A stretch of 64,000 nt of DNA from Epithemia pelagica (taxonomy: Eukaryota; Protista; Bacillariophyta), in NCBI GenBank assembly GCA_946965045.2, contig OX337232.1:620001-684000 (forward strand). The letters run 5' to 3'. The position numbers and the translations under genes are program-made. Positions 15,559 through 52,963 of this stretch are shown one piece after another (position 1 is the stretch's first letter; every line of letters starts with the position of its first letter). Under the pieces are notes generated by a model, which was not told the DNA's origin, did no database searches, and saw nothing but the letters and a program-made list of their open reading frames with translations.

Positions 15559-16932
15559 CTACCTGCAGAGTTTTCGAAGAATTGACTTCTTCGTTGCAAC
15601 CAAATGCCTGGTCAAAGCGTTACCTTGAGGTATTTTCGCCTTCAAGTCGTCAAGCAAGGAGTCAAGGAACGGCTCAACGACTTGTCTTCGCGTTTGCTCA
15701 TCTTCAAATGTACCTCCTTTAGGCACTTGAAGGGCCGGGATTTCTGCCGGAGCCCATGATTGAATTTGACCAGAGAGTTTTTCCTGCTCGGCGACTTTTT
15801 GCTCGTCGTCAATCTCGTTTTCGCTATCGAATGGACCATGAACAGCATGAAGGAAGTTGCCATCATGAACTACTGTGTTTCGGTCTGGTGGCCAACTCAG
15901 CAGCGTGCTCGATGGGACTGTTTGGACAAAAAAGCTCAGTCCCGATAAAATTCTGCAAATGGCTTCAGTTCGAAGCTCTTGCGAGTAATGATTGCTGTTG
16001 TTCTTTCCACCAAAAAGATCCCGTTCCCAATGTACATTCCATTTTCGGCTATTGACGACGAGCAATTCATTAAGCACCTTCATCCCAACTTGGGACCAGC
16101 GATACTGAAGTCCCTCTTGGCCATTACTGATGCTCATGCCTTTTGAGATCAAAAGGGCAGTGAGTCCCTCCGCTTGCTTATAAATGCAAGTTTCGGCCAT
16201 TGACTGGAAAGTTGCAGGTGTCAAAGCAACACGTATGCCGTTGACGTTATTGGTGAGAACCGCTATAGATTTGTTCTGGGCCGTGACGTTATTGGTGAGA
16301 ACCGCAATATATTTGTTCTGGGCCGTGACGTTATTGGTGAGAACCGCAATATATTTGTTCTGGGCCGTGACGTTATTGGTGAGAACCGCAATAGAGTTGT
16401 TCTGGGCTTCCAGTTGAGCTTCGAACGACATCGCAATAGATTTGTTCTGGGCTTCCAGTTGAGCTTCGAACGACATCTTCAGAGCTTCGTAGTCTGCCTT
16501 CCGCGATTTTTCGTTCTCCATCTTCTGGGCTTCGAGCTTCGTAACGCTACTGTTGAGAGCTTGCTCGAGAGCCGCAATAGATTTAACGCTACTGTTGAGA
16601 GCTTGCTCGAGAGCCGCAATAGAATTGCGCAGAGCTTCGTTTTCAGTCTTCAACGACGTGTTCATCTCATCGAGTATCTGAGCCATTGTCTCGTAAAGCA
16701 CGGGGCGTTCGCAATTGCGAAGTGATTTGCAAGGTTCAATGTCGCTCGCATTCTTGTACATCAGTACGCTGCTTGACATGGCAAAAAGTGGTCGTGGTGA
16801 GGAGTGGAAGAACCTTGGCGATGTGAACGGTACGTTAGTTGAAGCCCATGGAGAATGCAGAGCAAAACAGGATGGAGCCAGAAGAGCAACCAAGGAAAGA
16901 AGAAAAGGCACAAGAAATGATGGAAGCTTCAT
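15559..16932 (-). CDS. Uncharacterised coiled-coil + helical-domain family, copy 1 (signal/plastid-like leader; RNTVVH motif)
   Basis: Intact ORF from MKLPSFLVPFLLSLVALLAPSCFA. The C-terminal domain (MAETCIYKQAEGLT...EAICRILSGLSFFVQTVPSS.LLSWPPDRNTVVHDG...LCR) is clearly homologous to 44757-45734 and 50501-51330. Confidence 0.8.
   Translation of the reverse strand: MKLPSFLVPFLLSLVALLAPSCFALHSPWASTNVPFTSPRFFHSSPRPLFAMSSSVLMYKNASDIEPCKSLRNCERPVLYETMAQILDEMNTSLKTENEALRNSIAALEQALNSSVKSIAALEQALNSSVTKLEAQKMENEKSRKADYEALKMSFEAQLEAQNKSIAMSFEAQLEAQNNSIAVLTNNVTAQNKYIAVLTNNVTAQNKYIAVLTNNVTAQNKSIAVLTNNVNGIRVALTPATFQSMAETCIYKQAEGLTALLISKGMSISNGQEGLQYRWSQVGMKVLNELLVVNSRKWNVHWERDLFGGKNNSNHYSQELRTEAICRILSGLSFFVQTVPSSTLLSWPPDRNTVVHDGNFLHAVHGPFDSENEIDDEQKVAEQEKLSGQIQSWAPAEIPALQVPKGGTFEDEQTRRQVVEPFLDSLLDDLKAKIPQGNALTRHLVATKKSILRKLCR
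16242..16623. repeat. Intragenic 42- and 45-bp tandem repeats encoding 14/15-aa coiled-coil units
   Basis: AQNK[SY]IAVLTNNVT ~x4, SFEAQLEAQN[KN]SIA x2 and SIAALEQALNSSV[KT] x2, all visible as nucleotide repeats. Confidence 0.9.
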
Positions 16933-17399
16933 GGCTTTGCTTTCGAACGGTGTAGCTACTTGCGGAAATCCCGCCAGAACAATTCTATCAAGAGTCAAGA
17001 GCCAAGGGATGAAGTTGTGAGTTGTGAGAGTTCTGTTGTGCGAGCATCGAGCATTCGACTTTCGACGACCCCGATGAATTTTCACGGTGAGCTGTTCTGC
17101 CGTAGGGACACTACTGGGACTGAGTAGTAGTATTACGTTGTATGTTGTACGTGTATGTTGTATGTTGTATGTGCAGTGTCACTGTGGACTATATTGTATG
17201 GTATGAGATGAAGACGGCCACACTCACACTCTACCCTCTACCTTGGACCTTGGCAGGAAAGAGAGCCTCCTAGTCTACTCTCTGTAGCTTGAAGAGTACG
17301 AGTATCCATTGGGATGTGCTCCTTGAGGCTTGAGGGAGGCGGAGCTACCGGTGATTTTACATTCACAGGAAATCGGGGAATGGTGCAAAGTAGCGCACT

Positions 17400-18110
17400 C
17401 TACAATACACAATACACAATACGTAGCGCCCAAATGAACATAAGCACTTTTGAGGCTCACTTGCGCTCTAAGTTTCTCCATGAGCCTTGTCCCTCCCCTC
17501 CGGCAATGACACTTCATTACTACTCATATCTCGTATGTGTATAGGGTTTAGGAGTAGGTACTTCCTTCGTTCACTCAGAAGTTCCATGAGCCTCGTCTAT
17601 GGCAATTGGCAATAAACGCTTCAGCTTCAGTCTTCAGTCGTCTTACTGCGTCTACCTCTAAAGTCTAAAGAGCAGTTATTAGCAGTGCCTCTTCTCCTTA
17701 CCATACTATTAGAGCTCTCTACTACTCCTACTACTCCTTTTGTAGCTCTAGTAGTCGAAGGCGGATATGCGGGATATGCGATTTGCAAAAAGACTACTGT
17801 CCGATCCGGTGGGTGGTATAAGGCCATTCCTTCAAAGATCGGTCATGTTAAAGACTCGTAATCATAAAGAGTGACTATTAGGATCCTCTAGCCTAGAGGT
17901 CTATGTCTCGCTAAATCCTCGCTCACAAACGCGACCATTTCTCGGTCCCCTCGCGAATCCATAGTCCGATTATTAGGGTATTCGTGCTTCATCTCCTATT
18001 CTCGTTCAGTTAGCTCCAAAACCTGCTTATAGCTCATCTTCAATCGAGTGTATCCTAGAACTCCGAACGTCTCTCAAAAAGCTATCCGAAAGTCTTTCAT
18101 TTGACTTTTT
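17400..18110 (-). pseudogene. Decayed ORF with multiple in-frame stops in TpA-rich sequence
   Basis: One minus-strand frame reads protein-like (ETFGVLGYTRLKMSYKQVLELTERE*EMKHEYP...HRPLG*RILIVTLYDYESLT*PIFEGMALYHPPD...) but is broken by TAG/TGA. Its origin is unidentified and its boundaries are approximate. Confidence 0.45.
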
Positions 18111-18730
18111 CAGGCCTTCATAGCGAAATGAGAGACATTCGGGGAAACTTTCGTTTTTAGGGATAGGGTCAAACTTGGGAATGCAGTTGAAGTGGCACTG
18201 ACAAGACAGCTAGGGTCATTTTCTTTAAGAAGAGTCAATATGGAAGAGTAATGGAGACATCGACGGTCACTGGATGGTCTGTCCGGATGTCAGTCTAATT
18301 TTTGAAAGTTTCTCCGAACGTCTGTCATGAAAGTCCCTCATTTCACTCCTCTCGAGCAGAACCCAGAGGGTTTTTTGTGTTCCAAAGGATGAAAAGTTGT
18401 TGTCGGGCATTTTCAGTGCGGAGCCAAGTCACGAAAAACCAGGACTCACTGCACCCTCCGCACCGATGAAAAGCATTCTCTCTCAACAACGAGGAGAAGT
18501 GAGAAGAAGGGAAATGGTATACTAGACGAAACAGGAAGTGTTTACAACAAGTAATGAATGAAACGGGGGTTCAGTATTCAGTACCCCACTGAAGCACTTC
18601 AACACACAGTTTTGCTAATTTAGGAGTGTAACGAGGAGAGCAAAAGAGAGCATTTACAATCCTACAATCCTACCGTTGACAAACATTAAAGCCACGTTGT
18701 AAGCCACGGCCGAACAAGAGTCGTTGTACC

Positions 18731-20924: not shown

Positions 20925-21043
20925 ATTCCTCCCATTGATCAGAGTTTCGTAGACCGTGGCTGGACAGGTCGTCTTTTACTTGGCAAGTGCTGTCAAGGAA
21001 TTGGTCGATAATACGTTGGATGCCAACAGCCAATCTATCAACA
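20925..21043 (+). pseudogene. Frameshifted 5' fragment of a MutL-family (PMS2/PMS1-like) gene
   Basis: IPPIDQSFVDR, then a frameshift, then VAGQVVFYLASAVKELVDNTLDANSQSIN. This matches the MutL N-terminal GHKL motif (GQVV...AVKELxxNxLDA). It ends at a GTACGT donor and no continuation is recognisable. Confidence 0.7.
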
Positions 21044-21720: not shown

Positions 21721-21803
21721 GGTGCTGTCGGGATCAGAGGGATCTGATATAAACATGTCTTCGAACACGCATTCAGTATATAGATTCTCTTTTGTCGCAT
21801 TTG

Positions 21804-22148
21804 TCAAAATATGAGACCGGATGATTCACCGACGGACACACATGCCGATCATTTTTTTTCATTCGCACTTGCATGGACCACACTAGAGCAAAGAGTACCC
21901 GTACCATTGAGTCGCCGAACATATTGAAGCTCTTCTTGACCATTATTATTGATCTCCGTGCCTTTAGAGCTCAAAAGGGACGTGAGTCCTTCCGCTTGTT
22001 TGTAGATGCAAGCTTCAGTCATTGCCTGGGTTGTTGCAGGCGAAAAAGCAACACGTATGCGGTTGATCTCTTTTCCGAGCCTCGTTACGTTTTGCTGGAG
22101 AACCGCAATCGATTTGTTAGCTGGAAGCGCAGAAGACGGAGAACGAAG
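21804..22148 (-). pseudogene. Truncated remnant (copy 4) of the coiled-coil + helical-domain family
   Basis: Open frame NKSIAVLQQNVT...IRVAFSPATTQAMTEACIYKQAEGLTSLLSSKG...GQEELQY, after which similarity is lost. There is no RxxxxH region and no upstream ATG in frame. Confidence 0.75.
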
Positions 22149-29056: not shown

Positions 29057-29746
29057 CTAGTAGGAGAGAGTGCTAGGATGTAGACACGCACTTTTGCCGA
29101 AAGGCCCAGAAGGAACCAAGATGCAAATGTTGCCTATCGTCAGCAACTTCGTTTTTCCACGTTGTTTTACTGTGGAGTACTCGCAACTCCGCATCGCAAA
29201 AAAATATCCGGCGAGGGCGAGGTCAGCAATGCAAGCCTCAAAGGTTGACAGGTCAATGTCGCCATGGGTTCTTGTGGCGTACTCCCACATGAATCGAAGG
29301 TGGCGTGGAGTGATCGCTTTTTGTCGTTTCTCGTCAGGGTCGATTTGAGCCCAAGCTTTTTTAAGGGACTCGATTATGGGGTGATACCGGTTGCATCCCG
29401 GGACGTGGCAGGGGCTTGGCCGGTCGTTATACCGGAAGCGCGATGCCACGTCGCTAAGGGCCTTCTCGAGAGTTGACGCTCGAAGAGGGTCCGTAGCCCC
29501 TCTTGTGAAAGCTCCATCTCGGAGTCTCTGCAAGAAGGTGCCGACGATCTGCGATCTCGTTCGAACGGTCTTGATGCCGTCCAAAAAGGGGTCGTCTCGA
29601 AGTCGGAAGAGGTCGAGGTGTTGGAGCCATCGACGCCAAGTCCTGTCGATGGCTTCGTTGGACGATTCGACGCGTCCAAAGAAAATTCTTGCAGCAGCGG
29701 TGCGACGGATGAGATCCATGACTGCACTTCGCTGGGTAGGGGGCAA
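29057..29746 (-). pseudogene. Tyrosine recombinase ORF, apparently 3'-truncated
   Basis: LAGYFFAMRSCEYS contains the first catalytic Arg box. The ORF stops ~40 aa later with no HxxR or catalytic Tyr. It overlaps the RT-RH ORF by 373 nt in another frame. Confidence 0.7.
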
Positions 29747-32700
29747 ATCCGGAAGTTCTTCGGAATCTGTGAAGTATATAAATCGTGGATACGCTGGGTT
29801 AGAGTTTCATCACAACAATCAAACGTTCGCGATAAAAGGTCAGTAACCACGTTTGTTGTCCCTGGTATGTGCTCAGGATGGAGCAGAAAGTTGTACTCCA
29901 GCACTAACTCTGTCAGTTTTGCTGATACCCTTTGGTGGTTGGGTTTGTTGGACCCGAAGGATGACTTGTGCATCCATCCAGTCGCTGAGCTGCTGTCCGA
30001 AAGTCCCAGGACACATGATTCGGATGTGATGGCGCCGTCGCAACAATCAACCCAGATCGTGACGACCTGGCAAACGAACTCGAATAGGTTGTTCGAGAGT
30101 TTCAGGTCTGGGTCTTGGCCCAGTTCGTCTTGTTCCATTTCGGATTGGTTGGCCGCGAGGGCGTAGATCTCGGGGTCTAATGGCACGTGCCAAGCTTTCC
30201 CGGTACGTACAGAGAATCCGCCCATGCCGTATGGGCAAGAGTCCGCTAGCACGACATTTGTTGGGCAGCGACATGTGAGAAGGTTCAGACTCACTCCTTT
30301 GTGTGCTTTTTCTAAAAGTTTGGACCAAATGCGAAGGTCTTGTTTGATAGCTTTTGGGATCTTGTATCGGAACCAAGGTTTCGGGCGGTCTTGGTTCTGA
30401 GCCGAAGGAGTATCACGAGTTTCTTTGTTCTGCCGTCGTGCTTGGCCGTGTTTAGCTCGGTGTTTCTTGAGGATGTGTTCTTTCAGCTCCTGTGTTCGCT
30501 TCGTGTGGTAAAGAGCCAAGGGGATGCCTTTACAGGCATGAATCATCTTCCCCAACATCGACTCAAGTTCTTTAAACGTGACATAAACCCGTTTCGGGTC
30601 AATCCACTCTCCGATTTCTCGCGACCAGCATGTAAACTTGTCGAATGGAAGTCGCATCAACAATCTACGAGTGTCGATTATCCATCCGAGGACTCGCATT
30701 TCTTCGGATGGGGCTCCTTCCGCTTTCATTTTGTCTTCGGCCAAAATATCATTGCGGTCGATCGGTTCGTCTGGTCTTGATGGTCGGACAAGAAGGTGAA
30801 GGACCAGTGGGACAATTCCCGGTGCTCGATTGATGTGCTCCGGACAATCCACAAACAATTGAATCATATCATCGATATACACGTCGTGGTATCCTTGTGG
30901 TCGTGGTTCTACATCCACCGCCATCGGTTGGCCGGCGTGGAACGGAATAGAGTCGTCAAGTCGTTGGACGTCACCCATCATGTCCTGGAGTGGTGAACGA
31001 ACTTTCGAAGGCTCCCACTCGTCCAAATCCGCAACATCGTTGCAGAGGTCGCAGGATGCCTCCGAAAAAACGCTGAACATCGCAGGATGTGGGCGGCCGC
31101 CGAAGGTGAGTCGAGTGAGGAGATTTGCAAATTCTCCACTCACATCCGTTGTGATTGTGTTTGCCACCAGGATACCGTCGCCGTTGATGCGACGGTATGC
31201 GGATCCCCAGTCGAACTTGCAAACAAGGATGCGCTTGTCTGGAAATTTTAGTCTCAACGCGACAATCTGGTGGATGATCCTATCGAGACACCACCCGAAA
31301 ACCAAATCAATCAACTCATCGACTAAGTCGTTGAGAGACGGTGCAAAGCCGAGGGAGAAGGACTGATCATGGGCTAAGCGGTCCTTGATCACAATGTTGC
31401 CATGCTCATCAATACCGGCGTGTTGAGCAACACCGAGTGGTCCGGCTCGGCCTTGTTGGATCTGGCGAGCGCAGTCGAAGGAAATGGGAAAGGAGTATCC
31501 AAATTTTGTATCCTTTTTACACACCTTGATCAAAGCTTCCGGACGTTTTCGGGCTGAAGCGTGATTGCCGTATGCGAGAATCGCATCATTCTCGAACTGA
31601 CGATTTATATCTGGGGGTAGTGGCTTGAAATCATAGCTGGCTCCATCGCGTAAGGTATCTCGAATCCGATTCCAGAATGGGTGATGACGAAGGAGCCGGG
31701 CGATGGAACTCAATGGACGAAATTCGGAACCGGGGCTGATTGTCGTGCCTGGGTAGGCATCAAAAAGTTTCTGGAGGTCGAAGTCGAATTGTTTGATCAA
31801 GTCCGAATTAAACTTCGCAGCTTTGGCAGATGTCTGGTGTTGGAATGGCGAAGGGAGTGGTGCTGGGACAACCTCCTCGCTGATGGCCAGAATAGTTTCG
31901 ATCTTGTGGGTATGGGTCGGTGTAGCTAGTGGTGGGCGCCGTATCTTATTCGTAAAGATTAGCGATGGGTCATTTGGTAGATAGTGGTTGTCTCCTTGAA
32001 AGTCAACAAGGGAGGGATTGTTGTGGTTGTTGGTAGAAAGATTTTGGGGGCAAACAGGGTCGGACTCACCTAACATAGATTCTCCGAGTTCGATCTCAGA
32101 TTCAAGTCTGGAAAGGTTCCTTTGGAGGGATTTCCCAGTCAAATCGGATGAGATGATGGGAGAAGGCGAGCCAAACGATCGCGGTTTACCAAAAGGAATT
32201 AGTTGGTCAGGCTTGGGGGTCAAGAGAACATCGCCTTGCTCGTGGTTCCGAATGGAAGCTTCTTCAATGTTCCGAATAAAATCTGCAGTTGCTGGTACGG
32301 TAGAAGGGTTCGTAGACGGAGCCAAGGATTGAGAACTCCGAGATTTATCCTGGGGGGAACGTAAGATTGGTTGGGTCGTGCAGTCAATCTTGGGGGAATG
32401 AGAATTCGCAACTGTCGATGCGGGCTTATATCGATCGAAAATTTTGGTCTTGAAACTCTTCTGGAAACGGACTGTCGGTTCAGAGGGGGCTGGCGACGGT
32501 CGTAAGATCTTTTCCTTCACATCAGAAGAAGAGATTCGGCGTTCATCAGAAAAGACTTGGGGAATCAACGGAGTCGGTGCTTTTGGAACTTGAAAAGGAA
32601 TATCACTCGGATCTGGAGGGATTGTAATTGGTTGTCTTCGTGTGATTGGTGGTGATGGAGGGTAGAGAGATGAGAAGTAAGAGGAACCGTTTTTTCTAGA

Positions 32701-32748
32701 AGAAGGAGATACGCTGTTACCAGAATCATCAATCCACCCAACACTCTG
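29374..32748 (-). CDS. Reverse transcriptase - RNase H (pol-like ORF2)
   Basis: CKFDWGSAYRRI, RLTFGGRPHP and DVYIDDM (YxDD) for RT. VLADSCPYGMGG, NLFEF, LSDSSSA and HIPGTTNVVTDLLSR for RNase H. The frame stays open back to the ORF1 stop. Confidence 0.9.
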   Translation of the reverse strand, partial: QSVGWIDDSGNSVSPSSRKNGSSYFSSLYPPSPPITRRQPITIPPDPSDIPFQVPKAPTPLIPQVFSDERRISSSDVKEKILRPSPAPSEPTVRFQKSFKTKIFDRYKPASTVANSHSPKIDCTTQPILRSPQDKSRSSQSLAPSTNPSTVPATADFIRNIEEASIRNHEQGDVLLTPKPDQLIPFGKPRSFGSPSPIISSDLTGKSLQRNLSRLESEIELGESMLGESDPVCPQNLSTNNHNNPSLVDFQGDNHYLPNDPSLIFTNKIRRPPLATPTHTHKIETILAISEEVVPAPLPSPFQHQTSAKAAKFNSDLIKQFDFDLQKLFDAYPGTTISPGSEFRPLSSIARLLRHHPFWNRIRDTLRDGASYDFKPLPPDINRQFENDAILAYGNHASARKRPEALIKVCKKDTKFGYSFPISFDCARQIQQGRAGPLGVAQHAGIDEHGNIVIKDRLAHDQSFSLGFAPSLNDLVDELIDLVFGWCLDRIIHQIVALRLKFPDKRILVCKFDWGSAYRRINGDGILVANTITTDVSGEFANLLTRLTFGGRPHPAMFSVFSEASCDLCNDVADLDEWEPSKVRSPLQDMMGDVQRLDDSIPFHAGQPMAVDVEPRPQGYHDVYIDDMIQLFVDCPEHINRAPGIVPLVLHLLVRPSRPDEPIDRNDILAEDKMKAEGAPSEEMRVLGWIIDTRRLLMRLPFDKFTCWSREIGEWIDPKRVYVTFKELESMLGKMIHACKGIPLALYHTKRTQELKEHILKKHRAKHGQARRQNKETRDTPSAQNQDRPKPWFRYKIPKAIKQDLRIWSKLLEKAHKGVSLNLLTCRCPTNVVLADSCPYGMGGFSVRTGKAWHVPLDPEIYALAANQSEMEQDELGQDPDLKLSNNLFEFVCQVVTIWVDCCDGAITSESCVLGLSDSSSATGWMHKSSFGSNKPNHQRVSAKLTELVLEYNFLLHPEHIPGTTNVVTDLLSRTFDCCDETLTQRIHDLYTSQIPKNFRICPLPSEVQSWISSVAPLLQEFSLDASNRPTKPSTGLGVDGSNTSTSSDFETTPFWTASRPFERDRRSSAPSCRDSEMELSQEGLRTLFERQLSRRPLATWHRASGITTGQAPATSRDATGITP

Positions 32749-35574
32749 TCAGGTGTTGCTCTTCTTCGCATCCGCAAAAGCTTTCTTGTAAAAGGAAGAC
32801 ATTGCTGCACCTTTTCCATGCTCTCGAGGATCCGCGTGGCTAAAGGGGCATTGGTTTCCGTTTCGGCAGTATTTCAAGGTGAAGAGTTTGTTGCAAAATG
32901 GACGGTCTACACCTTCTGCCGTCATGTGTGGGATCTTCGCAAGGACGGAACGTGAAAAGACTCGAGAATACTGGAGTTCCGTCGGGATGCACCAATCAGA
33001 CGGGGAGTCAAAGCGCACAATGGTGGGTGGAGAAGAACTGGGATCAGCAGAAGCCTTGCGCTTCTGCGAGTTTGAGGAAGAATTGGTCGAAGAGTTCTTG
33101 GGGGGGTCGTTCTGTCCTCGTGCTTTGGCTCTAATAGCCGACTCGATGAATTTTGGAAGCATCTTGCAGATGTCTTCTTTGGATTCAATCTTGTCGCATA
33201 ACTTGTTTATGTGGAAGTCCAGACGGTCGTTGCGAATGTCTTCGACGCACTTGGCGTCCTCAAGGTATGTATCGATAAAGCGTTGGATGGCGAAATCGAT
33301 CGAGAAAAGGACGCGGCATAAAAATGTCGGGTCCACGGCTTGACTGCTTCGGTAGATGTATCGATTAGAGAGTAAGTGCTCTACCATCTTGTGGAGCTGC
33401 AACGCAACAAAACACTCGTTGTTCCAGATTGCACAGGCAAAAAGGTAGAAGGAACGAAGTTGTGTCTGATATTCGTCGCAGGTAAGTGGGCAAAACAGCT
33501 TTTCATTGACAAAGATGTCTCTCATATCTTTTGTTGACAGTCCGTTATCACTTCGTAAGGAACTCTCATAGATTGCATGCTGGATGTCGTGATCGAGGGC
33601 AAGGTGCGAATCCGGTCCAGAGCAGCAATAAGGGTCAAAGGAGAAAGGAGAAAAACCACTGGGGTGGTCGTTTCCTCGCCAACGCAAGCCAAACTTTTGC
33701 AATACGCCACATTGACCGAAAAGGATGTAGCAAGCATTGTCTGACTTTCGGAAAACTCGAGCATGAATCGTCGAGTATAAAGTGTGTGTACTCTTTTGGT
33801 GAAACAATTCAGTCGCAATCTCGGACGGAGAGGAAGGCAATTCGGCAGTCGAGGGACCGACTTGGCCAAAAACAATCGCATTACGAAGGTGAGTTGTATG
33901 CTTGAAGATTTCTTTCTTTTCGTCTTCCTTCTCACGGGTGATCTTCGAGGTATGCTTTGCGATTGCGTCGGAGAAATTCTCGGACAACTTCTCAGTCATA
34001 TAAATGGTATCGGCCGAAACTCCGCCACCCGAATTTTGCTGCTGGATAGGAGAAAAATTCGGAGGTTGACCAGTAGGAGGAGCAACTGGGACGTTGGGGT
34101 TGATCGGTGGCAAGGGGACCTGAGATGGACTATGAGGAGCTTTCGCCTTCAAGGAAGGAAAAATTTTCGTCGAGTAAGCTTCAAAGGCTGTCGAAGCTTC
34201 GACAGAGTTGGGTGGGACTTCGATAGCAATTGGTTCAGTGCGGGAACGCATATGATGGGCGAACCAAAGGAAACGAAACAGATCGTGGCTGAATTTGATC
34301 AGCTCATGGTACATCGGAAAAGAGGTGCATTTCATCTGAAGCTCTTGTGGGGTGGAAGTCATCCATCGTTGATTGAGGAACTTGAAGATGAGGGAGGCCA
34401 GAAAAGGTGCAGTGCAACGAGAAGAGCTCAGATCTTGGGAACCAAAGTGATCCAACAATAAACCCGAGATGGAAGGATGAAGAGGGAACAAGCCTTTCAA
34501 AGAAAAGGTAGTCGCAGCCTCATCCTTATCAGTCGTCGGTTTCTTGAGGTTACCGAAACGCAACAAATCGAACTTGAAAGATGGGAGAACGTTCTTGGAA
34601 CGGGACTTGGATGTCGAAGACGCGTTCTCGTCAATGCAACAAGACTTAATGATTTCCTGGGCTGTTGGTACATCGGGATATTCGACTGTCAAAAGGAGTT
34701 CGTCGACATCTTCGGGGTCGATCCAAATCGGGGGAGAACCAAATTCTCGCTGCGAAAGCCCAAGGAAAATCGGATCGGGATTGACAAAGTTTCCAGTGTT
34801 CGGCGCAACAATCATATTGTGGACAATACGGATCTTGCCTCGACGATCAACTCCCAAAAAGGCAAGGGGAGTATAGCCTAGGTCGCATGTGAGGAAGCGT
34901 TGAAGTTTCTCAGCCGAAGAAACAGTTTCAAACTTATCACAAAACTCGGTCCACGAGTTGGGGAACTTGTCCAAAGAGCGGTGAAAAGGGGATACAAAGG
35001 CATCGGACCAATCCACAGGTTCCATAGAGTCAACCAAATCAAGATGTTCCTGAGAGAACGGGATAGGGAGGCGAAAAAGGTCTGAAGGACGGGACAGGGC
35101 AGTCGGCGTCTTGGAGTTGTCATCAGATCCGCGCTGGGGTTGCTGGCGAATGGAAGAGACCAAATCCTTCTTCGAAATCTTCTTCTGGGTCAAAGTGGAC
35201 ATAGAAGATTTCTTGGAAGTATAATTCGCTGGGGTAGTACCTTCATCGTCCTGATCGGGATTCGACGAGGCTTTTGTCGTTGTCTTCGACAGCTTCGTAC
35301 TCTTAGACGAACGGGACTCATGACTTCCGGAACTGTTCGAACGAGTGCGACGACGATCGTGGCCAGAGTCTTCGACAGAAGGAGGGTTACCATCAAGACT
35401 CAACAAATCATCATCATCGTTCGTACCGTAATGAGATTCGGGCTGGGAAGGCTGCGAGATAAACTGAGCCAAAGTGGCAGTCCCGTTGCCTTCAGTACCG
35501 CCAGAATCGGAAGGAGAAGCCGTGTCTTCCATGTTGGAAAACATCTCGTCGTCAAAGGCAGTAGTAACAGTCAT
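32749..35574 (-). CDS. Retroelement ORF1 (gag-like, 941 aa) with C-terminal CCCH zinc finger
   Basis: Long intronless ORF directly upstream of RT, with C-terminal FCNKLFTLKYCRNGNQCPFSH. Confidence 0.8.
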   Translation of the reverse strand: MTVTTAFDDEMFSNMEDTASPSDSGGTEGNGTATLAQFISQPSQPESHYGTNDDDDLLSLDGNPPSVEDSGHDRRRTRSNSSGSHESRSSKSTKLSKTTTKASSNPDQDDEGTTPANYTSKKSSMSTLTQKKISKKDLVSSIRQQPQRGSDDNSKTPTALSRPSDLFRLPIPFSQEHLDLVDSMEPVDWSDAFVSPFHRSLDKFPNSWTEFCDKFETVSSAEKLQRFLTCDLGYTPLAFLGVDRRGKIRIVHNMIVAPNTGNFVNPDPIFLGLSQREFGSPPIWIDPEDVDELLLTVEYPDVPTAQEIIKSCCIDENASSTSKSRSKNVLPSFKFDLLRFGNLKKPTTDKDEAATTFSLKGLFPLHPSISGLLLDHFGSQDLSSSRCTAPFLASLIFKFLNQRWMTSTPQELQMKCTSFPMYHELIKFSHDLFRFLWFAHHMRSRTEPIAIEVPPNSVEASTAFEAYSTKIFPSLKAKAPHSPSQVPLPPINPNVPVAPPTGQPPNFSPIQQQNSGGGVSADTIYMTEKLSENFSDAIAKHTSKITREKEDEKKEIFKHTTHLRNAIVFGQVGPSTAELPSSPSEIATELFHQKSTHTLYSTIHARVFRKSDNACYILFGQCGVLQKFGLRWRGNDHPSGFSPFSFDPYCCSGPDSHLALDHDIQHAIYESSLRSDNGLSTKDMRDIFVNEKLFCPLTCDEYQTQLRSFYLFACAIWNNECFVALQLHKMVEHLLSNRYIYRSSQAVDPTFLCRVLFSIDFAIQRFIDTYLEDAKCVEDIRNDRLDFHINKLCDKIESKEDICKMLPKFIESAIRAKARGQNDPPKNSSTNSSSNSQKRKASADPSSSPPTIVRFDSPSDWCIPTELQYSRVFSRSVLAKIPHMTAEGVDRPFCNKLFTLKYCRNGNQCPFSHADPREHGKGAAMSSFYKKAFADAKKSNT

Positions 35575-35843
35575 CGTAGATCCAAAGTTGTTTTTGATTG
35601 TCTTAGTCTATCTATCTCTGTGTAGACCTCTCAAGATGGCAGTTGCGATGCTCGCAATCTCAAGAATTGTGAGCATGGACATCGCATCAGAGATGTCCAA
35701 GTCCAGTGGGGCTTGTCGTAGTCTATGTGCGATCAACTGCCCCGCTCCAACGTACGCACGACAGACACACCTCCACTCTGTTCTCACAATTTCCGGTTTC
35801 ATCCCAACTCCAAACCATCACAAAACAACACAACACCAACACC

Positions 35844-36707
35844 ATGAAGTACTCGATTGCCTCCGTCGCCTTCATGCTTGCCCTAAGCAGCTGCAGCAGC
35901 AGTGTATTGGCCGATTCGACGACTGACTTGAACGTACGTGATCTCAAGGCGCATCCCCAATTTCCCACTCCCGCACCGGCCAAGGGTAAAGGAAAAGGCA
36001 AGGGAGATGAACCTCCGGCCAAGGGCAAAGGTAAGGGATACACCGAACCACCTACCAAGGGCAAGCGCTACGAGATGGAGCCTCCTGCCAAGGGCAAGGG
36101 ATACGATGATAGCAGCAGCCGAGGAAAGAAGGAATCTGGCAAGATGATGATGAAGGGCAAGGGATACGAGATGGAAGAACCTCCTGCCAAGGGTAAGGGC
36201 AAGGGATACGAGCCAGAACCACCAGCAAAGGGTAAAGGCAAGGGATACGAGACTGAAGCTCCTGCCAAGGGAAAAGGAAAAGGATATGAAACCGAGGCTC
36301 CTGCAAAGGGCAAAGGAAAAGGAAAGGGATACACCGAACCTCCAACAAAGGGCAAGGGTAAAGGATATGAAACCGAGGCTCCAGCCAAGGGCAAAGGAAA
36401 AGGATACACTGAGCCACCCACCAAAGGCAAAGGAAAGGGCTACGAACCCCCTGCCAAGGGCAAAGGAAAAGGTTACACTGAGCCTCCTACCAAGGGCAAA
36501 GGAAAGGGATACGAACCTGAACCTCCTGCCAAGGGTAAGGGCAAGGGATACGAACCGGAACCACCTTCCAAGGGTAAGGGCAAGGGATACGATGATAGCG
36601 ACTACAGCGACAAGAAGGACAAGAAGTCGGGCAAGAAGGAGAAGGGCGACAAGGACGATAGCGGCAAGAAGGACAGCGGCAAGAAGGACGACGACTATTA
36701 CCGATAA
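35844..36707 (+). CDS. Secreted Lys/Gly/Pro/Tyr-rich repeat protein (silaffin/cingulin-like composition)
   Basis: Signal peptide MKYSIASVAFMLALSSCSSSVLA, RDL (RXL) motif, more than 12 repeats of (P/A)P(A/T)KGKGKGY(E/T)E, and a D/K/S-rich tail with KSGK/SGKK. Confidence 0.8.
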   Translation: MKYSIASVAFMLALSSCSSSVLADSTTDLNVRDLKAHPQFPTPAPAKGKGKGKGDEPPAKGKGKGYTEPPTKGKRYEMEPPAKGKGYDDSSSRGKKESGKMMMKGKGYEMEEPPAKGKGKGYEPEPPAKGKGKGYETEAPAKGKGKGYETEAPAKGKGKGKGYTEPPTKGKGKGYETEAPAKGKGKGYTEPPTKGKGKGYEPPAKGKGKGYTEPPTKGKGKGYEPEPPAKGKGKGYEPEPPSKGKGKGYDDSDYSDKKDKKSGKKEKGDKDDSGKKDSGKKDDDYYR

Positions 36708-43387: not shown

Positions 43388-44449
43388 TTACAAATCGCGA
43401 CGGCCCGAACCCGGGACTTGCTTCATGGTAAACAAGAGAAGGTGTGCCACGTCGGTTCCTGTTTCGTTTGTTTCCGTTTTGGTTGCCTGAATTCTAATGG
43501 TAGTGGGAGAATCAGCAGTTCCTTGGATTTCACAAGCGTCGTGTCGTTCCAAAGCCTTGCCATTGACCTTGATGCCGCCTTCAATACACAACAAATAGGC
43601 TTGTTCACCGGCAGGTAATTCATGAACCACTGTTTGATTCAGATCGAGTTCGGAGGCAAAGGCATTGACACTTTGATTGACTTGTACGGGTGCCACCAAA
43701 GCGTCATTCTTGTTGTTGGGTTTGTGGCTCACGCTCGATACGAGGTGTCGCAATTGATTGTGACGACCGGCCCTTGCATCTGGTGTATCACCTCGATAGG
43801 AACCATAATTGGGTGAAAGACCTCGTTTCGTTGGTGTAATCCAAGTTTGAATGAACCGAAGGGGTGTATCGCCATGATTGAATTCGGAATGTCGCACTCC
43901 AGTGCCGGCCGTCATGAATTGAATACTGCCACGACCCAAGGTTTCCTTGGTTCCCATGGAATCTTGATGGGTCAATTGACCTTGGACAACATAAGTGATG
44001 ATTTCCATGTTGGAATGGGGATGTGTGCCAAAGCCGCGGTGAGGTTGGACCAAATCATCATTCATGACACGCATGACACCAAAGTCGGCATTACGGTAGT
44101 TGTTGTACTCCGCAAAGGAGAAATGAAATCGAGATTTGAGCCAGTTGTCGTTAGTCCAGGACGGATCGTTCTTGGGATTTTGCTTGTTGCCAAACCAACG
44201 AGGATCAGGTTCCGAGACATAGAGTTTTTGGTTGGGTACCACGCGAACGGTTGCCTCTGAAATGGTAGAACTTGTCGTCATGGTAAAAGTCGTTGTGGAT
44301 GTAGCTGTCATGGACATGGTTGTTTTTATCGTTCTAGTTCGTGTTCTTTGTTTGTGTGATGTTGTCTTTGTCTTGCGTTGTCGACTGTTTTGGTTTTTAT
44401 GAGACCACATGGAGGGGGTCCTGACTGGAGTTTTTTTTGCAAACGCCAT
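43388..44449 (-). CDS. Pirin-family (cupin) protein
   Basis: SRFHFSFAEY, GVMRVMNDD, GFGTHPHSNMEIITYV and QFMTAGTGVRHSE, with the metal-binding His/His/His/Glu pattern. The exact start is uncertain. Confidence 0.92.
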   Translation of the reverse strand: MAFAKKTPVRTPSMWSHKNQNSRQRKTKTTSHKQRTRTRTIKTTMSMTATSTTTFTMTTSSTISEATVRVVPNQKLYVSEPDPRWFGNKQNPKNDPSWTNDNWLKSRFHFSFAEYNNYRNADFGVMRVMNDDLVQPHRGFGTHPHSNMEIITYVVQGQLTHQDSMGTKETLGRGSIQFMTAGTGVRHSEFNHGDTPLRFIQTWITPTKRGLSPNYGSYRGDTPDARAGRHNQLRHLVSSVSHKPNNKNDALVAPVQVNQSVNAFASELDLNQTVVHELPAGEQAYLLCIEGGIKVNGKALERHDACEIQGTADSPTTIRIQATKTETNETGTDVAHLLLFTMKQVPGSGRRDL

Positions 44450-44756
44450 TTTGTGAAGAAGCTGGTTCACTCCCGAGCGACGGAATTTCGAGGATCAAGC
44501 TTGAGTACTCTAAAAGTCACAGTGAGATTCAAAGATTTCGATCGGTATCTTTCCTAAACCAGCAGGAGGAAGTTCTTCGAAGTGCTTCGGAAATCAGCTC
44601 GTGACGATCAGTCGCCCTTTTCGAGGCAGTCGTCCACCACATCGTGTTGCTCGCTGACAGATATCTCGCACCCGTTGTTTCTGAAGTCTGAAGCCTCAAT
44701 CGTACCTTGTCCATTGTCTTTCCTTTCTTTCGTATAGTGATGCATTCTATTGAGTA

Positions 44757-45734
44757 ATGTATTCTCGATTGGTATTGAAGAACGTGCCTTTGGCATCGCC
44801 AAGGTTTTGTCCTCCACCACGACCACTCCTTTCGCGGCAAAGCAGCCAAACCATGTTGTTCTCTTCTGCGTCCGAGAACGAGAGCGACTCTCTGGTCAAA
44901 CGTGAGCGCCCCAGTCTTTCAGAGAAATTCTCAAGTCTTTCAGAGAAACTGAATGAGATTAAGAAGTCCCAGCAAGATTTACGTGCTGAGATTACAAAGC
45001 AACAGGATGAGATTGCAAAGCTCCAGCAAAACCATACAAAGCTCCGAGAAGGGATCAATGGCCTTCGATGTGTTCTTGCGCCCGCAACTACCCAGGCCAT
45101 GGCCGAAACATGCATCTACAAGCAAGCGGAGGGACTCACTTCCCGTTTGATCTCACAAGGCATGGTTATCTGGAATGGCCAAGAAGGGCTTCAATATAGT
45201 TGGTCCCAAGTTGGGACGAAGGTGCTTGATGAACTTCTCTTGGCAAATGAGGACGACCAAGCATTGGAAATAAGTTGGGAACAGGAGCTTTTTGGTGGAA
45301 AGGATAATACTGCATTTCATACACAAGAGCTTCGAGTTGAAGCGATCTGTGCCATTTTATCCGGACTGACCTATTTTGTTAAAACAGTCCCATCGAGCAC
45401 ACTGCTGAGTTGGCCACGAGACCAAAACACTTTTTCGAATGATGGTGCCTATCTGAATGCGTTTCTCGGTTCAGTGGAGAGCAAAAGTGAGATCCAAGAT
45501 ACAAAGAAAGTCGCTGGTGTAATTCAGTCGTGGGTGCCCTCCGAAATCCCTTTCCAAAAGGTCCCCGAAGAAGGAGGCGACTACAACAACGAGCAAACGC
45601 GAAGAGAAATCGTTGGGCCGTTTCTTGAATCCTTGGTTAACGAGCTGAAGAAAAAATTACCAGAAGACAACATTGTCATCAGTCGTTTGGATACCACCAA
45701 GCAGTCTGTTCTTACAGAACTCTGCAGGAATTAA
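44757..45734 (+). CDS. Coiled-coil + helical-domain family, copy 2 (mitochondrial-type leader; motif degenerate QNTFSN)
   Basis: R/S/P/L-rich, acid-free N-terminus MYSRLVLKNVPLASPRF..., a coiled coil, then the same domain as 15559-16932. Confidence 0.8.
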   Translation: MYSRLVLKNVPLASPRFCPPPRPLLSRQSSQTMLFSSASENESDSLVKRERPSLSEKFSSLSEKLNEIKKSQQDLRAEITKQQDEIAKLQQNHTKLREGINGLRCVLAPATTQAMAETCIYKQAEGLTSRLISQGMVIWNGQEGLQYSWSQVGTKVLDELLLANEDDQALEISWEQELFGGKDNTAFHTQELRVEAICAILSGLTYFVKTVPSSTLLSWPRDQNTFSNDGAYLNAFLGSVESKSEIQDTKKVAGVIQSWVPSEIPFQKVPEEGGDYNNEQTRREIVGPFLESLVNELKKKLPEDNIVISRLDTTKQSVLTELCRN

Positions 45735-49700: not shown

Positions 49701-49974
49701 CTTGAAACGCATGGTCTATCAAGATGGCGATCCGCATACCGGACCTGACAGCATTTTCCGTGCCGATGATAACAAACATTTGGATATCGCACCCTTTGAA
49801 GAAGAAGAACATGTTGTGGAACTGTCTGCCACTCGTAGTATGGACAGTGACGAAGTTCCAGGTGGAGACCAGGGCAAGTTTAACAACACAAGTGGTGGTG
49901 CACAAGCACCGGAGCAACCATCGCCTGAAAATCCTTCGGAGAACAAGGAAATGAGCCAAGTGGAGCTTGTGTAA
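46762..49974 (+). CDS. Multi-EGF type I membrane protein C (two modules, several introns)
   Basis: Signal peptide with RSL, the same module and introns as A and B, and TM helix KFGIVLVVAVGLACIAFVMLYF. Confidence 0.85.
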
Positions 49975-50500
49975 TTGTTGACATACCAGAAAAGTTTATA
50001 GATTTGCCGTACTAATAATATGAGAGATTGAACGAATGTTTTCTGTAAATTGGCAAACGAGAGTCCACAGAGAACGGAGTTACTAAGGTTGCATCAGAGT
50101 GTCTTAACATTGGACTTTTGAGTGCAGCAATTGCGTCCCTGCACATATTTGCAAGTGTAGAGCATCATGATTGAGTCCTCTGCTCTTGCGCCGCTTTCCG
50201 AGTTTCTGTCATTCCCCTAGCATCTACCAAAGAACCAAGTTGTGGACAACAGAGTTAAAGTCTTAAAGCCAACAGTCTAGAGGGATGAATGAGTCATGAT
50301 GTGCTCATACATCAATTCCATTGATGCAAAACAAATCAGTGGCTTGACGTCATATTCGCACCTTCAAGACTGGTCCGAAAGGGAAAAGTGGCCAATAAAC
50401 GAACAAAAGGCCAGTGTTCTTGTCCCCAAGTGAGAGCGTTTCACATGAATCTTCGGATTGACGAGCGACAAGACGACCACATGTCAGATATTATCAAGTC

Positions 50501-52963
50501 TCAATTCCTGCAGAGTTTTGTAAGAACAAACTGCTTTGTTGTCTGCAAACGATTGATACAAATGTCATGTCCCCGAAATTTCCCCACCAATTCGTTTACC
50601 AGGGAATCTAGAAAAGGCTCAACCATTTGCCTTCGTGTGTTTTCCGTTTCATAACTACCACCATTCGGGACCTGAAGAGCGGGGAGTTTTGGAGGCACCC
50701 ACGATTGAATCTGACCGACGACTTTCTGAACGTCGTCAATCTCATTTTTGCTCTCATATGGACCATGAAGAGCATGAAGGAAGTTGCCATCATGAACTAC
50801 TATATTTCGCGCTGGTGGCCAATTCAGCAGCACGCTCGATGGGACTGTTTTGACAAAAAAGCTCAGTCCCGATAAAATGGCACAGATCGCTTCAGTTCGA
50901 TGTTCTTGAGTTTGCAATGCAGCATCCATTTTACCCAAAAGCATCCCTCTCCAACGTTTGTTCTGAGCTCGTTTACCTTGGATAAGTTCATCAAGCACCT
51001 GCATCCCAACTTTGGACCATAGATACTGCAGGCCTTCTTGGTCAATGCTGATTTCCTCGCTGATTTCCTTGTCTTGCGAGATGAGGCGGAAAGTGAGTTC
51101 CTCCACTTGTTTATATACACAAGTTTCGGCCATGGCAAAGGTTGTTGCAGGTTCCAAAGCCGATCTTATACCGTTCAATTCTTGCTGGCGCTTCTTATCA
51201 TTTTCTTGGAGTTTCGTAATCTGACGGGCCTGAGCTTCTTGATTCTCTCGCAGAGCTTTGTTGTCCGTCCGGAGAGCTTTCATCTCATTGGACAGAAAGT
51301 CCATTTTCTTGGAGAGGTCAAAGGCTTCGCGGGGATCCGGTTTGTCGGCACCCCACAAGGTGGCAGCCGTTTCGTTGGGTTGGACCGGACCGACATTTTC
51401 TATACACAAACACGTCCAAAGACAAACACCATGGTGAGAGAGTGAGGAGAGAAGTCTGGTTCTCCATGGTCCGTGCCACACATAAAGAGGACTTCTTCTA
51501 CTACTAGAACACGTACCATCCAAGAGAGAAAAGGAGGGAAGCAATTGTGTGGCATCGTAGGGTTTCCAGGCCACGGCATCCCCATCGGCACTGCATTTCA
51601 AGGCGCGGAGCCAGGTAAAGGTGACGAGGGCACCCGAGGGATCGCACACGTACGTGCCTTCGCCGACAATGGCCGTTTGCAAACAAATGCCGGCATAGCC
51701 CCCCTGTCCCAATTTGATGCGGGCATGGGGCGCCAAGGCCACATCAATTGTGGTACGATTGCCCAAGACAATGCCCTTGTTGGAAATTTGCGTCCGCAAG
51801 TCTTCACTAAAGTGCGAATGAAAGGGCGGTTCTCGCGGTGTAGTACTGTTGTTACTTGTGGCTCCTCCTTCGCCGGCGGTCCCTTCACCTCCTCCTTCCG
51901 TATTGGTTCGTCGATTGCCTCCATTGGTGCGTCGATTGTTGTTGCCGCCGCCGGGTCCACCGCGTGAGGAACGCCCCCGTCCTCGTCCCCCATTCTTGGT
52001 ATCTGTTGGGGCCGTGCCTCCTTCGGGTTCGGCGGCCGCCGCGGCCGCATCGTCAGTGGCGTCACCCTCACCCGACGTTGGTCGATTGCGTCGTGGTTGA
52101 CGAGGCGGCGGCACAATGGGACTTCCATCCCGATTGGTCACATTGACCGCCTTGAGACGACCGGAATCGGCTTCTTTTTCCACATCAAATTTCACTTCGG
52201 AATCGCCCTGGAAACAATGAGCGAACGAACCAAACAAAAAACACAGAGGTGAGTACTTCTAGCCTGGAGAAAGCACAGTGTTGCTGTTGCTGTTTCATGG
52301 GGCATCACAGAACGACACAATCCACGAACGACGCCACACAATTTACAATCGAGCCATGGTCAACACGAAACCAAGCAGGCCGTTGCATCGAGCATAATTT
52401 AACGGTACTGCTTCCAGAAACCAAAGAAATTGTAGTTTCTTGGTCGCTTCCAACTTGATAGGCAGATATATTTCTTCCTTATTCCATTACGAAGATTTCT
52501 TTTTTTCTCCTTTCCCCATTGCTTCATTCATCCACACACATGAGCAATTTGGCAGGTCTTGATTTGTCGCTTGTCGTCGAAACGATTTGGAAGGTACAAA
52601 AACCATGTTCCTTGGTATCTTTCTTTGATTCGTTCTTGACAAATTATACAGTCTCTTGCCTTGGCCGACGAACTGCGTTCCGGAATGGTTCTCACGCTCC
52701 CAGGATCAACGACACACTCAAAGACATTGACTCTTCTCTCTTGCGCGCGAGACAAATACACACACACTACAACAAACACTACTCACCGCCAAGGTTCGAA
52801 ATTGTCCATTGGTGACAATGCCCGTTTGATGGACAAAAATTTCTTCCGTCAAGGTCGAATTCACCGGTGTCAAGAATCCAAAGCCTTTGCGATTGGAAAA
52901 CCACTTGACCGTCCCTTCGACACCCGTCATGTGAATCGTATTAGTATTGTTGGAATCGGTCAT
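50501..52963 (-). CDS. Cold-shock-domain/RGG protein fused in frame to family copy 3 (RNIVVH motif); introns 52786-52208 and 51516-51400
   Basis: GTVKWFSNRKGFGFL (RNP1) and IFVHQTGI (RNP2). GT-AG splicing continues into GDSEVKFDVE...AVNVT and an RG/GG-rich linker. No stop occurs before the coiled coil and the MAETCVYKQ...LCRN domain. Confidence 0.75.

What the first reader, a model, noticed from the sequence alone, without database searches (positions are those of the whole stretch)
15559..51330. Dispersed four-copy protein family with an RNxxxH (HEPN-like) motif and different N-terminal modules
Seen: one ~250-aa helical domain preceded by a coiled coil occurs at 15559-16932(-), 44757-45734(+) and 50501-51330(-), with a remnant at 21804-22148(-). 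The copies are in unrelated gene contexts, in both orientations, and have no introns in the domain. Copy 1 has RNTVVH (15865-15882) and copy 3 has RNIVVH (50792-50809); copy 2 has QNTFSN at the aligned site (45423-45440). The N-termini are unrelated: signal + transit-like (copy 1), mitochondrial-like (copy 2) and cold-shock/RGG (copy 3). Established: R-x4-6-H, often with Asn second, is the catalytic signature of all-helical HEPN RNases, which act as dimers. Inference: an undescribed, mobile or shuffled RNase family sent to different compartments, with copy 2 a possible inactive partner. This could be a defence or cell-death system.
Basis: partly seen in the sequence, partly recalled or inferred. 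Interest (0 to 1): 0.78.

Follow-up and report, generated by a model that had tools for sequence, protein, structure and literature searches.

The report
Diatom coiled-coil RNxxxH protein family
A probable diatom carries an undescribed gene family (three full copies and a fragment in this window) whose helical end domain keeps an R-N-x-x-x-H motif like that of HEPN RNA-cutting enzymes, but neither sequence profiles nor predicted structure tie it to that enzyme family, so RNase activity remains a hypothesis.

Summary
Three intact paralogs and one roughly 70-aa fragment share a roughly 225-aa all-helical C-terminal domain behind a coiled coil (57-62% aa identity, dN/dS 0.33-0.51). All three motif coordinates are exact. 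One detail is wrong: the N-termini of copies 1 and 2 are homologous.

The family is larger than four copies, with at least 15 loci in this assembly. About 30 distant relatives (19-29% identity) occur in other assemblies and metagenome or metatranscriptome contigs. All are unannotated and none has a Pfam domain.

In the distant relatives W-P-P-x-R-N-x3-H-[ND]-G is the best-conserved polar block, so RNxxxH is ancestral. R or H was lost independently at least five times, and the whole copy-2 clade lacks H.

An AlphaFold2 model (pLDDT 77, pTM 0.82) places the motif in a loop after the third core helix, as in HEPN. Foldseek and VIA searches (best Z 5.4) and Pfam, PADLOC, NCBIfam and PDB profile searches find no HEPN or any other known family.

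Contigs of one run that look like RNA show two GT-AG introns joining a cold-shock/RGG exon to copy 3.

Best reading (0.4): a coiled-coil-dimerised, HEPN-like RNase family with inactive paralogs. HEPN membership is not established. There is no evidence for mobility or for defence.

The scan had noted only the copy-3 fusion before, in this same window.

The parts
15559..16932 (-). Copy 1: single-exon gene with signal peptide, transit-like stretch, long coiled coil and C-terminal RNxxxH domain (stop codon at 15559-15561)
   Evidence: ORF; P0007 is the database model of this gene; domain alignment
16867..16932 (-). Copy 1 predicted signal peptide MKLPSFLVPFLLSLVALLAPSC, followed by F at +1 (a diatom plastid-type ASAFAP-like site; inferred, no predictor was run)
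   Evidence: Translation; similar SAF/CAF sites in the distant relatives P0018 and P0035
16237..16623 (-). In-frame 42- and 45-nt tandem repeats that lengthen the coiled coil of copy 1
   Evidence: TRF, 96-100% matches; repeat family D6; paralogs P0006, P0007 and P0008 differ in repeat number
15865..15882 (-). RNTVVH motif of copy 1
21918..22118 (-). Truncated remnant covering only the first ~70 aa of the domain; ORF 21849-22022 is the database protein P0017
   Evidence: tblastn at 46-65% identity; ORF; repeat family D4 at 80% DNA identity
44757..45734 (+). Copy 2: presequence homologous to the transit-like part of copy 1 but without a signal peptide, then a short coiled coil and the domain with a degenerate motif
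   Evidence: an in-frame stop codon upstream of the ATG
45423..45440 (+). QNTFSN at the motif site of copy 2 (R changed to Q, H changed to N)
   Evidence: clade relatives carry RDTFSN or RGIFSN
52787..52963 (-). Copy 3 exon 1: N-terminal part of a cold-shock domain
   Evidence: Pfam CSD E=3.3e-11, 43.3 bits against a cut-off of 27
52208..52786 (-). Copy 3 intron 1 (579 nt, GTGAGT..CAG)
   Evidence: Joint in run X2 contigs; intron ends; X2 depth is 319 in the intron against 1,500-10,000 in the adjacent exons
51517..52207 (-). Copy 3 exon 2: rest of the cold-shock domain, an RGG/Gly-Arg-rich stretch and a 100-aa region with no match
   Evidence: ORF; no Pfam hit
51400..51516 (-). Copy 3 intron 2 (117 nt, GTACGT..TAG; in frame and without a stop codon)
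   Evidence: Joint in run X2, depth 3081
50501..51399 (-). Copy 3 exon 3: linker, coiled coil and RNxxxH domain all in one exon (stop codon at 50501-50503); similarity to copies 1 and 2 begins about 70 nt inside this exon
50792..50809 (-). RNIVVH motif of copy 3 (R126, N127 and H131 in model m41a884472217)

Best explanation
Shown: these are paralogs of an orphan multigene family, apparently restricted to diatoms. The architecture is a variable N-terminal address (plastid-type signal plus transit peptide, transit or mitochondrial-like peptide, NLS-like basic stretch, or a CSD/RGG RNA-binding module), then a coiled coil of variable length, then a roughly 225-aa all-helical domain. The invariant polar residues of that domain are E20, T21 and Y24 (helix 1), S57 (helix 2), W-P-P-x-R-N-x3-H-[ND]-G (the loop after helix 3), and K202 and K217. 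Inferred: the domain is a metal-independent endoribonuclease of the HEPN type. The parallel coiled coil, which runs straight into helix 1, would bring two domains together so that the two RNxxxH loops form one composite active site. Paralogs that lost R or H (the copy-2 clade, P0005, P0006 and P0010) would be inactive and would act as regulators or heterodimer partners. The different N-termini would send the same RNase module to different compartments or, in copy 3, tether it to RNA. Membership in the HEPN superfamily is not established. The claim is that it works like HEPN.
For: The family and its motif are real. 25 of 38 sequences covering the site carry R-N-x3-H, and the counts in the 28-row alignment are R 24, N 25, H 21 and G 26. 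The motif sits in the most conserved block of relatives at 19-29% identity. The tree shows RNxxxH in every major clade, so it is ancestral, and the losses are independent. The spacing (R-x4-H) and the polar N after R match the HEPN signature described in PMC3710099. AF2 model m41a884472217 (pLDDT 77.4, pTM 0.82, all five models 70-77) is all-helical. It has an insert between core helices 2 and 3, and the motif lies in a flexible loop just after helix 3. That is the position and the non-helical character the same paper describes for HEPN. The coiled coil is continuous with helix 1. Copy 3 is spliced in frame to a CSD plus RGG module. CSD, coiled coil and HEPN co-occur in the prokaryotic CoCoNuT systems (PMC11090510). 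dN/dS of 0.33-0.51 shows that the proteins, including the H-less ones, are maintained by selection.
Against: No HEPN structure appears among the top 50 rows of Foldseek PDB, VIA wide or VIA second look for either model. The best Z is 5.0-5.4, to designed proteins, Spt6 and RsbR, which is noise level for helical bundles. No HEPN family appears in Pfam, PADLOC or NCBIfam at E<=10 for 24 domain sequences. The single 12-bit Csx1 hit maps outside that model's HEPN part. No PDB sequence matches the profile. The motif region is the least confident part of both models (pLDDT below 50 at residues 127-129). The HEPN helix-2 Ex3[KR] motif is not matched. The family has [ED]-x2-[QKR] at the start of helix 2 and an invariant E in helix 1 instead. 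One third of members lack R or H. The flanking W-P-P and [ND]-G are not HEPN features.
Confidence: 0.4

Rival explanations
1. The domain is a non-catalytic helical module, such as a scaffold, adaptor or ligand/partner-binding domain held on a coiled-coil stalk. The W-P-P-x-R-N-x3-H-N-G loop would be a binding or structural element and its likeness to the HEPN signature a coincidence.
For: There is no fold or profile link to any enzyme family. R or H is replaced in 13 of 38 sequences, and these paralogs still evolve under purifying selection (omega 0.33 for copy 2 against P0001). Coiled-coil stalk length varies freely through tandem duplication, as in structural proteins.
Against: Seven or more polar residues (E20, T21, Y24, S57, R126, N127, H131, K202, K217) are kept at 19-29% overall identity. 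That pattern is more typical of an active or ligand site than of a scaffold. The exact R-N-x3-H spacing is ancestral. The fusion to a CSD/RGG module points to RNA.
Confidence: 0.33
2. The domain is an enzyme or cofactor-binding protein of another kind. Possibilities are a globin-like or haem-binding helical sensor that uses the conserved His as a ligand, or a PAP2-like phosphoesterase.
For: Globin-fold sensors (RsbR N-domain, globin-coupled sensors, phycobiliproteins) and class-A acid phosphatases recur weakly in the VIA lists at Z 3.5-5.0, with about 110 aligned residues at rmsd about 4. A single conserved His sits in an all-helical domain.
Against: All these rows are at the noise level the tool itself describes for helical bundles. 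No PAP2 motifs (KxxxxxxRP, PSGH) are present, and there is no conserved haem-pocket pattern. No profile hits were found.
Confidence: 0.1
3. The module is cargo of, or derived from, a mobile element or virus and spreads by transposition.
For: The copies are dispersed, lie in both orientations and have no introns in the domain. Family loci L001 and L002 lie among Copia-type (RVT_2) and piggyBac-like (DDE_Tnp_1_7) genes. A truncated remnant exists.
Against: DNA similarity is confined to the coding region and ends at the stop codon. No terminal repeats or shared flanks were found. Neighbouring genes are ordinary and differ between copies. Copy 2 and P0001 were duplicated together with the adjacent pirin gene, which is a segmental duplication. 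dS of 0.56-0.80 between copies shows old paralogs. No viral structure or sequence hit was found.
Confidence: 0.05

Closest known systems
HEPN superfamily RNases (Ire1/RNase L KEN domain, Las1, Swt1, Cas13, Csm6/Csx1, HepT, RnlA; Anantharaman et al. 2013, PMC3710099)
   Same: All-helical domain. R-x4-H motif with Asn after Arg. The motif lies after the third core helix in a non-helical, flexible stretch. There is an insert between helices 2 and 3. Paralogs that lost the motif are frequent. An N-terminal coiled coil makes dimerisation plausible.
   Different: No detectable profile or structural similarity. The predicted domain has about nine helices rather than a four-helix core. About 45 residues separate the motif from the next long helix. 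The W-P-P and [ND]-G flanks and the invariant E-T-x-x-Y in helix 1 are family-specific. There is no Ex3[KR] motif in helix 2. The family is known only from (probable) diatoms.
CoCoNuT (coiled-coil nuclease tandem) Type IV restriction systems of prokaryotes (PMC11090510)
   Same: They combine cold-shock domains, long coiled coils and HEPN-type nucleases and are predicted to act on RNA. Copy 3 has CSD, coiled coil and an RNxxxH domain in one polypeptide.
   Different: CoCoNuTs are multi-gene McrBC operons with GTPases and helicases. Here the genes are single eukaryotic nuclear genes with no McrBC partner. This is an analogy of architecture only, with no homology shown.
Lineage-specific orphan multigene families of diatoms with variable coiled-coil stalks
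   Same: Species-level expansion, in-frame tandem duplications that change stalk length, and gain or loss of signal peptides among paralogs.
   Different: This family has a distinct, deeply conserved C-terminal domain with a catalytic-looking motif, and it has relatives in other organisms.

Membership tests
HEPN superfamily | Rx4-6H motif with a polar residue (N, D or H) right after R | tested here: met
   R-N-x3-H is present in 25 of 38 sequences covering the site. It is ancestral on the tree and is the best-conserved polar block. Definition taken from PMC3710099.
HEPN superfamily | Profile-level sequence similarity to a known HEPN family | tested here: not met
   Pfam, PADLOC and NCBIfam hmmscan of 24 domain sequences at E<=10 gave no HEPN family. 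The PDB profile search found nothing. A profile-profile search (HHpred) was not available.
HEPN superfamily | Four-helix up-down bundle superposable on solved HEPN domains | tested here: inconclusive
   Two AF2 models (pTM 0.74 and 0.82) gave no HEPN chain among the top rows of Foldseek PDB, VIA wide or VIA second look, with best Z 5.4. The tool states that a missing match does not show the folds differ, and the motif loop is poorly modelled.
HEPN superfamily | Motif at the end of helix 3 or the start of the loop to helix 4, often non-helical; insert between helices 2 and 3 | tested here: met
   In the model, helices 11-38, 49-69 and 93-120 are followed by the loop with R126-H131. An insert at 70-92 lies between helices 2 and 3 (description). 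This rests on a predicted structure only.
HEPN superfamily | Conserved acidic residue in helix 2 (Ex3[KR]) | tested here: inconclusive
   E or D is present at position 50, the start of helix 2, in 20 of 24 filled rows, but Q/K/R follows at +3 rather than +4. The invariant acidic residue E20 is in helix 1.
HEPN superfamily | Dimer with a composite active site; metal-independent RNA cleavage | not testable with these tools
   No multimer prediction or biochemistry was available. The coiled coil is only suggestive.
Cold-shock domain (N-terminal module of copy 3) | Match to Pfam CSD (PF00313) above the gathering score | tested here: met
   Exon 52787-52963(-): E=3.3e-11, 43.3 bits against a cut-off of 27. 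Exon 2 continues the domain. The exons were searched separately and were not joined.

The most novel reading that the evidence does not exclude
This is a previously unrecognised, diatom-specific clade of HEPN-like endoribonucleases. It would be dimerised by a coiled coil of adjustable length and sent by swapped presequences to plastid, mitochondrion, nucleus and cytosol. Catalytically dead paralogs would act as built-in inhibitors or partners, and one member would be tethered to RNA through a cold-shock/RGG module. It would be a eukaryotic RNA-degradation toolkit for organelle RNA control, stress, antiviral or cell-death responses.
Probability: 0.25. Interest if true: 0.7.

Novelty: new variant of a known kind. 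Interest (0 to 1): 0.5.

Why it matters
Diatoms are major primary producers, and much of their gene content is orphan. This family has a deeply conserved, catalytic-looking motif and about 50 members in all public data. It has clear paralog diversification in targeting signals and motif state, and one RNA-supported fusion to an RNA-binding module. If the RNase reading is right, it would add a eukaryotic branch to the HEPN world. It would also offer a tractable system, with active and inactive paralogs and a stalk of variable length, for studying RNA decay in complex plastids or in diatom stress and virus responses. If it is wrong, the domain is a new helical fold family whose conserved pocket still needs a function.

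Tried and rejected
- **Pfam on the three full ORFs and on 11 full-length relatives:** only coiled-coil noise.
- **Pfam, PADLOC and NCBIfam on 24 domain-only sequences at E<=10:** nothing relevant. I traced the one Csx1 hit (E 0.023, 12 bits) to P0018 residues 113-160 against model positions 97-143 of 332. That is outside the C-terminal HEPN part of Csx1, so I rejected it as noise.
- **PDB sequence and profile search:** nothing.
- **ESM Atlas by features (two calls) and by structure:** no usable hit.
- **Foldseek PDB twice, BFVD, VIA wide twice and VIA second look:** no match above noise. Weak globin-like and PAP2 rows were considered and rejected, because Z is at most 5 and the defining motifs are absent.
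- **Transposon reading:** rejected, because DNA similarity ends at the coding sequence and there are no terminal repeats.
- **Literature:** no paper holds the motif strings, and no paper links HEPN to diatoms.
- **RNA runs:** no run is on record as RNA. Run X2 is taken as RNA only because its contigs skip two GT-AG introns and intron depth is low.
- **Not done:**
  - No profile-profile comparison with HEPN alignments was made, because no HEPN reference sequences could be obtained from the tools.
  - Expression of copies 1 and 2 was not examined, because the single read-laying run was used on copy 3.
Full report
**1. Observation.**

The window holds three long ORFs at the stated places:
- 15559-17085(-), with a probable ATG at 16932;
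- 44757-45734(+);
- 50501-52237(-).

A 57-aa ORF lies at 21849-22022(-). The last roughly 225 residues of the three long ORFs align at 57-62% identity.

A tblastn of the three proteins against the window finds exactly four sites. The fourth, at 21918-22118(-), covers only the first ~70 residues of the domain at 46-65% identity, so it is a truncated remnant.

At the DNA level the copies are 74-86% alike. The similarity is confined to the coding region and ends within a few bases of the stop codons.

Pairwise dN/dS over the domain is 0.33-0.51, with dS 0.56-0.80 between the three copies. They are old paralogs under moderate purifying selection.

The N-termini of copies 1 and 2 are homologous (BLASTP E=4e-9, 37% over 68 aa; shared NVP[LF][AT]SPRF..PRPL..ERP.L). 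Copy 1 has an additional hydrophobic signal peptide, MKLPSFLVPFLLSLVALLAPSC, followed by Phe. Copy 2 has an in-frame stop upstream of its ATG.

**2. Size and range of the family.**

A word-indexed search with copy 2 found ten proteins, all from ENA assembly contigs of 1,147,593, 916,022, 487,552 and 36,311 bases. The only sample looked up, that of P0001, is ERZ21939226. P0007 and P0009 are the database models of copies 1 and 3. Fragments P0011, P0013, P0014 and P0017 add further loci. I count at least 15 loci.

P0001 (89% identical to copy 2, dS 0.11) sits next to a pirin gene, exactly as copy 2 does. That pair arose by segmental duplication.

An exhaustive HMMER search of 1.84 billion representatives with the in-genome profile gave only 13 hits. 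Six of them are distant relatives: P0012, P0015, P0016, P0018, P0019 and P0020.

Two further profile searches raised the family to about 50 proteins (P0022-P0050). They come from a second large assembly (ERZ25042306), a third (ERZ25039508) and many 1-7 kb JGI and ENA contigs.

None has a name other than 'hypothetical protein', apart from one automatic coiled-coil label. None has a precomputed Pfam domain.

Follow-up reports of this scan on other parts of the same genome call the organism a diatom or probable diatom. I did not test that myself. The SAF and CAF signal-peptide junctions of P0018, P0035 and copy 1 fit the diatom plastid-import rule, which I cite from my own knowledge.

**3. What is conserved.**

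In the broad alignment (A5 plus four more sequences, 28 rows, 19-29% identity between clades) the most conserved columns, in copy-3 domain numbering, are:
- E20 (27 of 27), T21 and Y24 in helix 1;
- S57 (26 of 27) in helix 2;
- L107 and F110 in helix 3;
- W122, P123, R126 (24 of 28), N127 (25), H131 (21), [ND]132 and G133 (26);
- K202 and K217.

Among all 38 sequences that cover the site, 25 have the full R-N-x3-H.

A maximum-likelihood tree puts all copies from this genome in one clade (support 100/99). RNxxxH occurs in every major clade, so it is the ancestral state.

The losses are independent:
- H lost in the copy-2 and P0005 clade;
- R to Q in copy 2;
- R to Q in P0006 and P0010;
- H to Q in P0037;
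- H to R in P0022 and in P0045;
- the whole motif lost in P0038.

The motif is the family signature, though a third of members have lost part of it.

**4. Fold.**

With the ten in-genome sequences, AF2 gave a marginal model (pLDDT 70, with only one of five models good).

With 24 diverse sequences the copy-3 domain gave pLDDT 77.4 and pTM 0.82, and all five models scored 70-77. Its helices are 2-38, 49-69, 78-83, 93-113, 116-120, 133-140, 151-161, 181-202 and 207-225.

The first helix continues the coiled coil. The motif (R126-H131) lies in a loop after the third core helix. This is the least confident part of the model (pLDDT below 50 at 127-129).

No search gave a match above noise. The best rows were Z 5.0-5.4, to designed helical proteins, Spt6 and the RsbR N-domain:
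- Foldseek against PDB;
- VIA-align against 48,161 representative chains;
- the VIA second look;
- BFVD;
- the ESM Atlas.

No HEPN chain appears in any list. The tool's own notes say such Z values are common for helical bundles, and that a missing match does not prove a different fold.

**5. Profile searches.**

Pfam on full proteins gives only coiled-coil noise.

On 24 domain-only sequences at E<=10, Pfam, PADLOC and NCBIfam give no HEPN or other informative family. The lone Csx1 hit (12 bits) maps outside the HEPN part of that model.

PDB sequence profiles give nothing.

**6. Comparison with the HEPN definition.**

The definition comes from PMC3710099.

Features met:
- Rx4-6H with N after R.
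- The motif lies after helix 3 in a non-helical stretch.
- There is an insert between helices 2 and 3.
- Family members that lost the motif are frequent.

Features not met or inconclusive:
- There is no profile link.
- No structural superposition was found.
- Ex3[KR] in helix 2 is replaced by [ED]-x2-[QKR] at the start of helix 2, plus an invariant Glu in helix 1.

I therefore do not file the family as HEPN. I keep 'works like a HEPN RNase' as the leading mechanism at 0.4.

**7. N-terminal modules and expression.**

Copy 3 is a three-exon gene. Contigs of run X2 skip 52208-52786 (579 nt, GTGAGT..CAG) and 51400-51516 (117 nt, GTACGT..TAG) on the minus strand. X2 depth in the first intron is 319, against 1,500-10,000 in the adjacent exons.

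The kind of run X2 is not on record. I read it as RNA from these joints.

- Exon 1 (52787-52963) matches Pfam CSD at E=3.3e-11.
- Exon 2 carries the rest of the cold-shock domain, an RGG-rich stretch and an unmatched region.
- Exon 3 (50504-51399) carries the linker, the coiled coil and the domain.

Similarity to the other copies begins about 70 nt inside exon 3. The module was therefore joined to a cold-shock gene at the level of an exon.

I searched the exons separately and did not build or search the joined protein.

No single contig spans the whole transcript. The fusion rests on the two in-frame splices and the open frame.

Distant members carry plastid-type presequences (P0018, P0028, P0035), transit or mitochondrial-like ones (P0005, P0022), or basic NLS-like stretches (P0016, P0019, P0020, P0042, P0043, P0047, P0048). 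No targeting predictor was available, so these readings are inference.

**8. Context.**

The neighbours are ordinary, unrelated nuclear genes: an OSCA/RSN1-type channel, YrhK-like, kelch and pirin.

Nothing indicates a transposon. L001 and L002 do show family members lying in regions rich in Copia and piggyBac genes.

The coiled coil of copy 1 contains in-frame 42- and 45-nt tandem repeats at 96-100% identity. Paralogs differ in repeat number.

**9. Verdict.**

This is a real, undescribed, lineage-restricted family with an ancestral RNxxxH signature. A HEPN-like, coiled-coil-dimerised RNase with inactive paralogs is the best-supported mechanism, but it is unproven. A non-catalytic binding module is nearly as likely. 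There is no evidence for mobility, defence or cell death.

CSD, coiled coil and HEPN also co-occur in the prokaryotic CoCoNuT systems (PMC11090510). That is an architectural analogy only.

Noticed in passing
window 16237-16623: In-frame 42- and 45-nt tandem repeats (96-100% identical units) build the coiled coil of copy 1. Paralogs P0006, P0007 and P0008 differ in unit number, so stalk length changes by recent tandem duplication.
   Followed up: partly
window 43388-44470(-) and L001 4549-5442: A pirin gene (Pfam Pirin 1.5e-28 plus Pirin_C_2) lies head-to-head with copy 2. The same pirin and family-gene pair recurs on the 916-kb contig, which indicates a segmental duplication. In L001 the pirin is called as two genes.
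   Followed up: partly
window 51400-51516: Intron 2 of the copy-3 gene is 117 nt, in frame and free of stop codons. Retention would add about 39 residues, and ORF-based gene callers (model P0009) read straight through it.
   Followed up: partly
window 35706-36707: An ORF made of degenerate 39/75-nt repeats encodes Lys/Gly-rich units (KGKGKGYEP.. type; repeat families D2 and D3).
   Followed up: no
window 29374-35574(-): Two very long minus-strand ORFs (1064 and 941 aa) lie back to back. I did not check it.
   Followed up: no
window 7581-13270(+): An OSCA/TMEM63-type channel gene (Pfam RSN1_TM, RSN1_7TM) is spread over several ORFs and is presumably interrupted by introns.
   Followed up: no
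window 62137-62410: A 37-41-nt tandem array (TCGGAATTCGGG.. units) lies near the window end, next to the element another report of this scan assigned to a Crypton-type transposon.
   Followed up: no
L003 283-1439: The distant family member P0048 is called as two adjacent ORFs (265 and 127 aa) on a 9.6-kb contig beside ammonium-transporter and AIM24 genes. It is probably one gene split by an intron or a frameshift.
   Followed up: no
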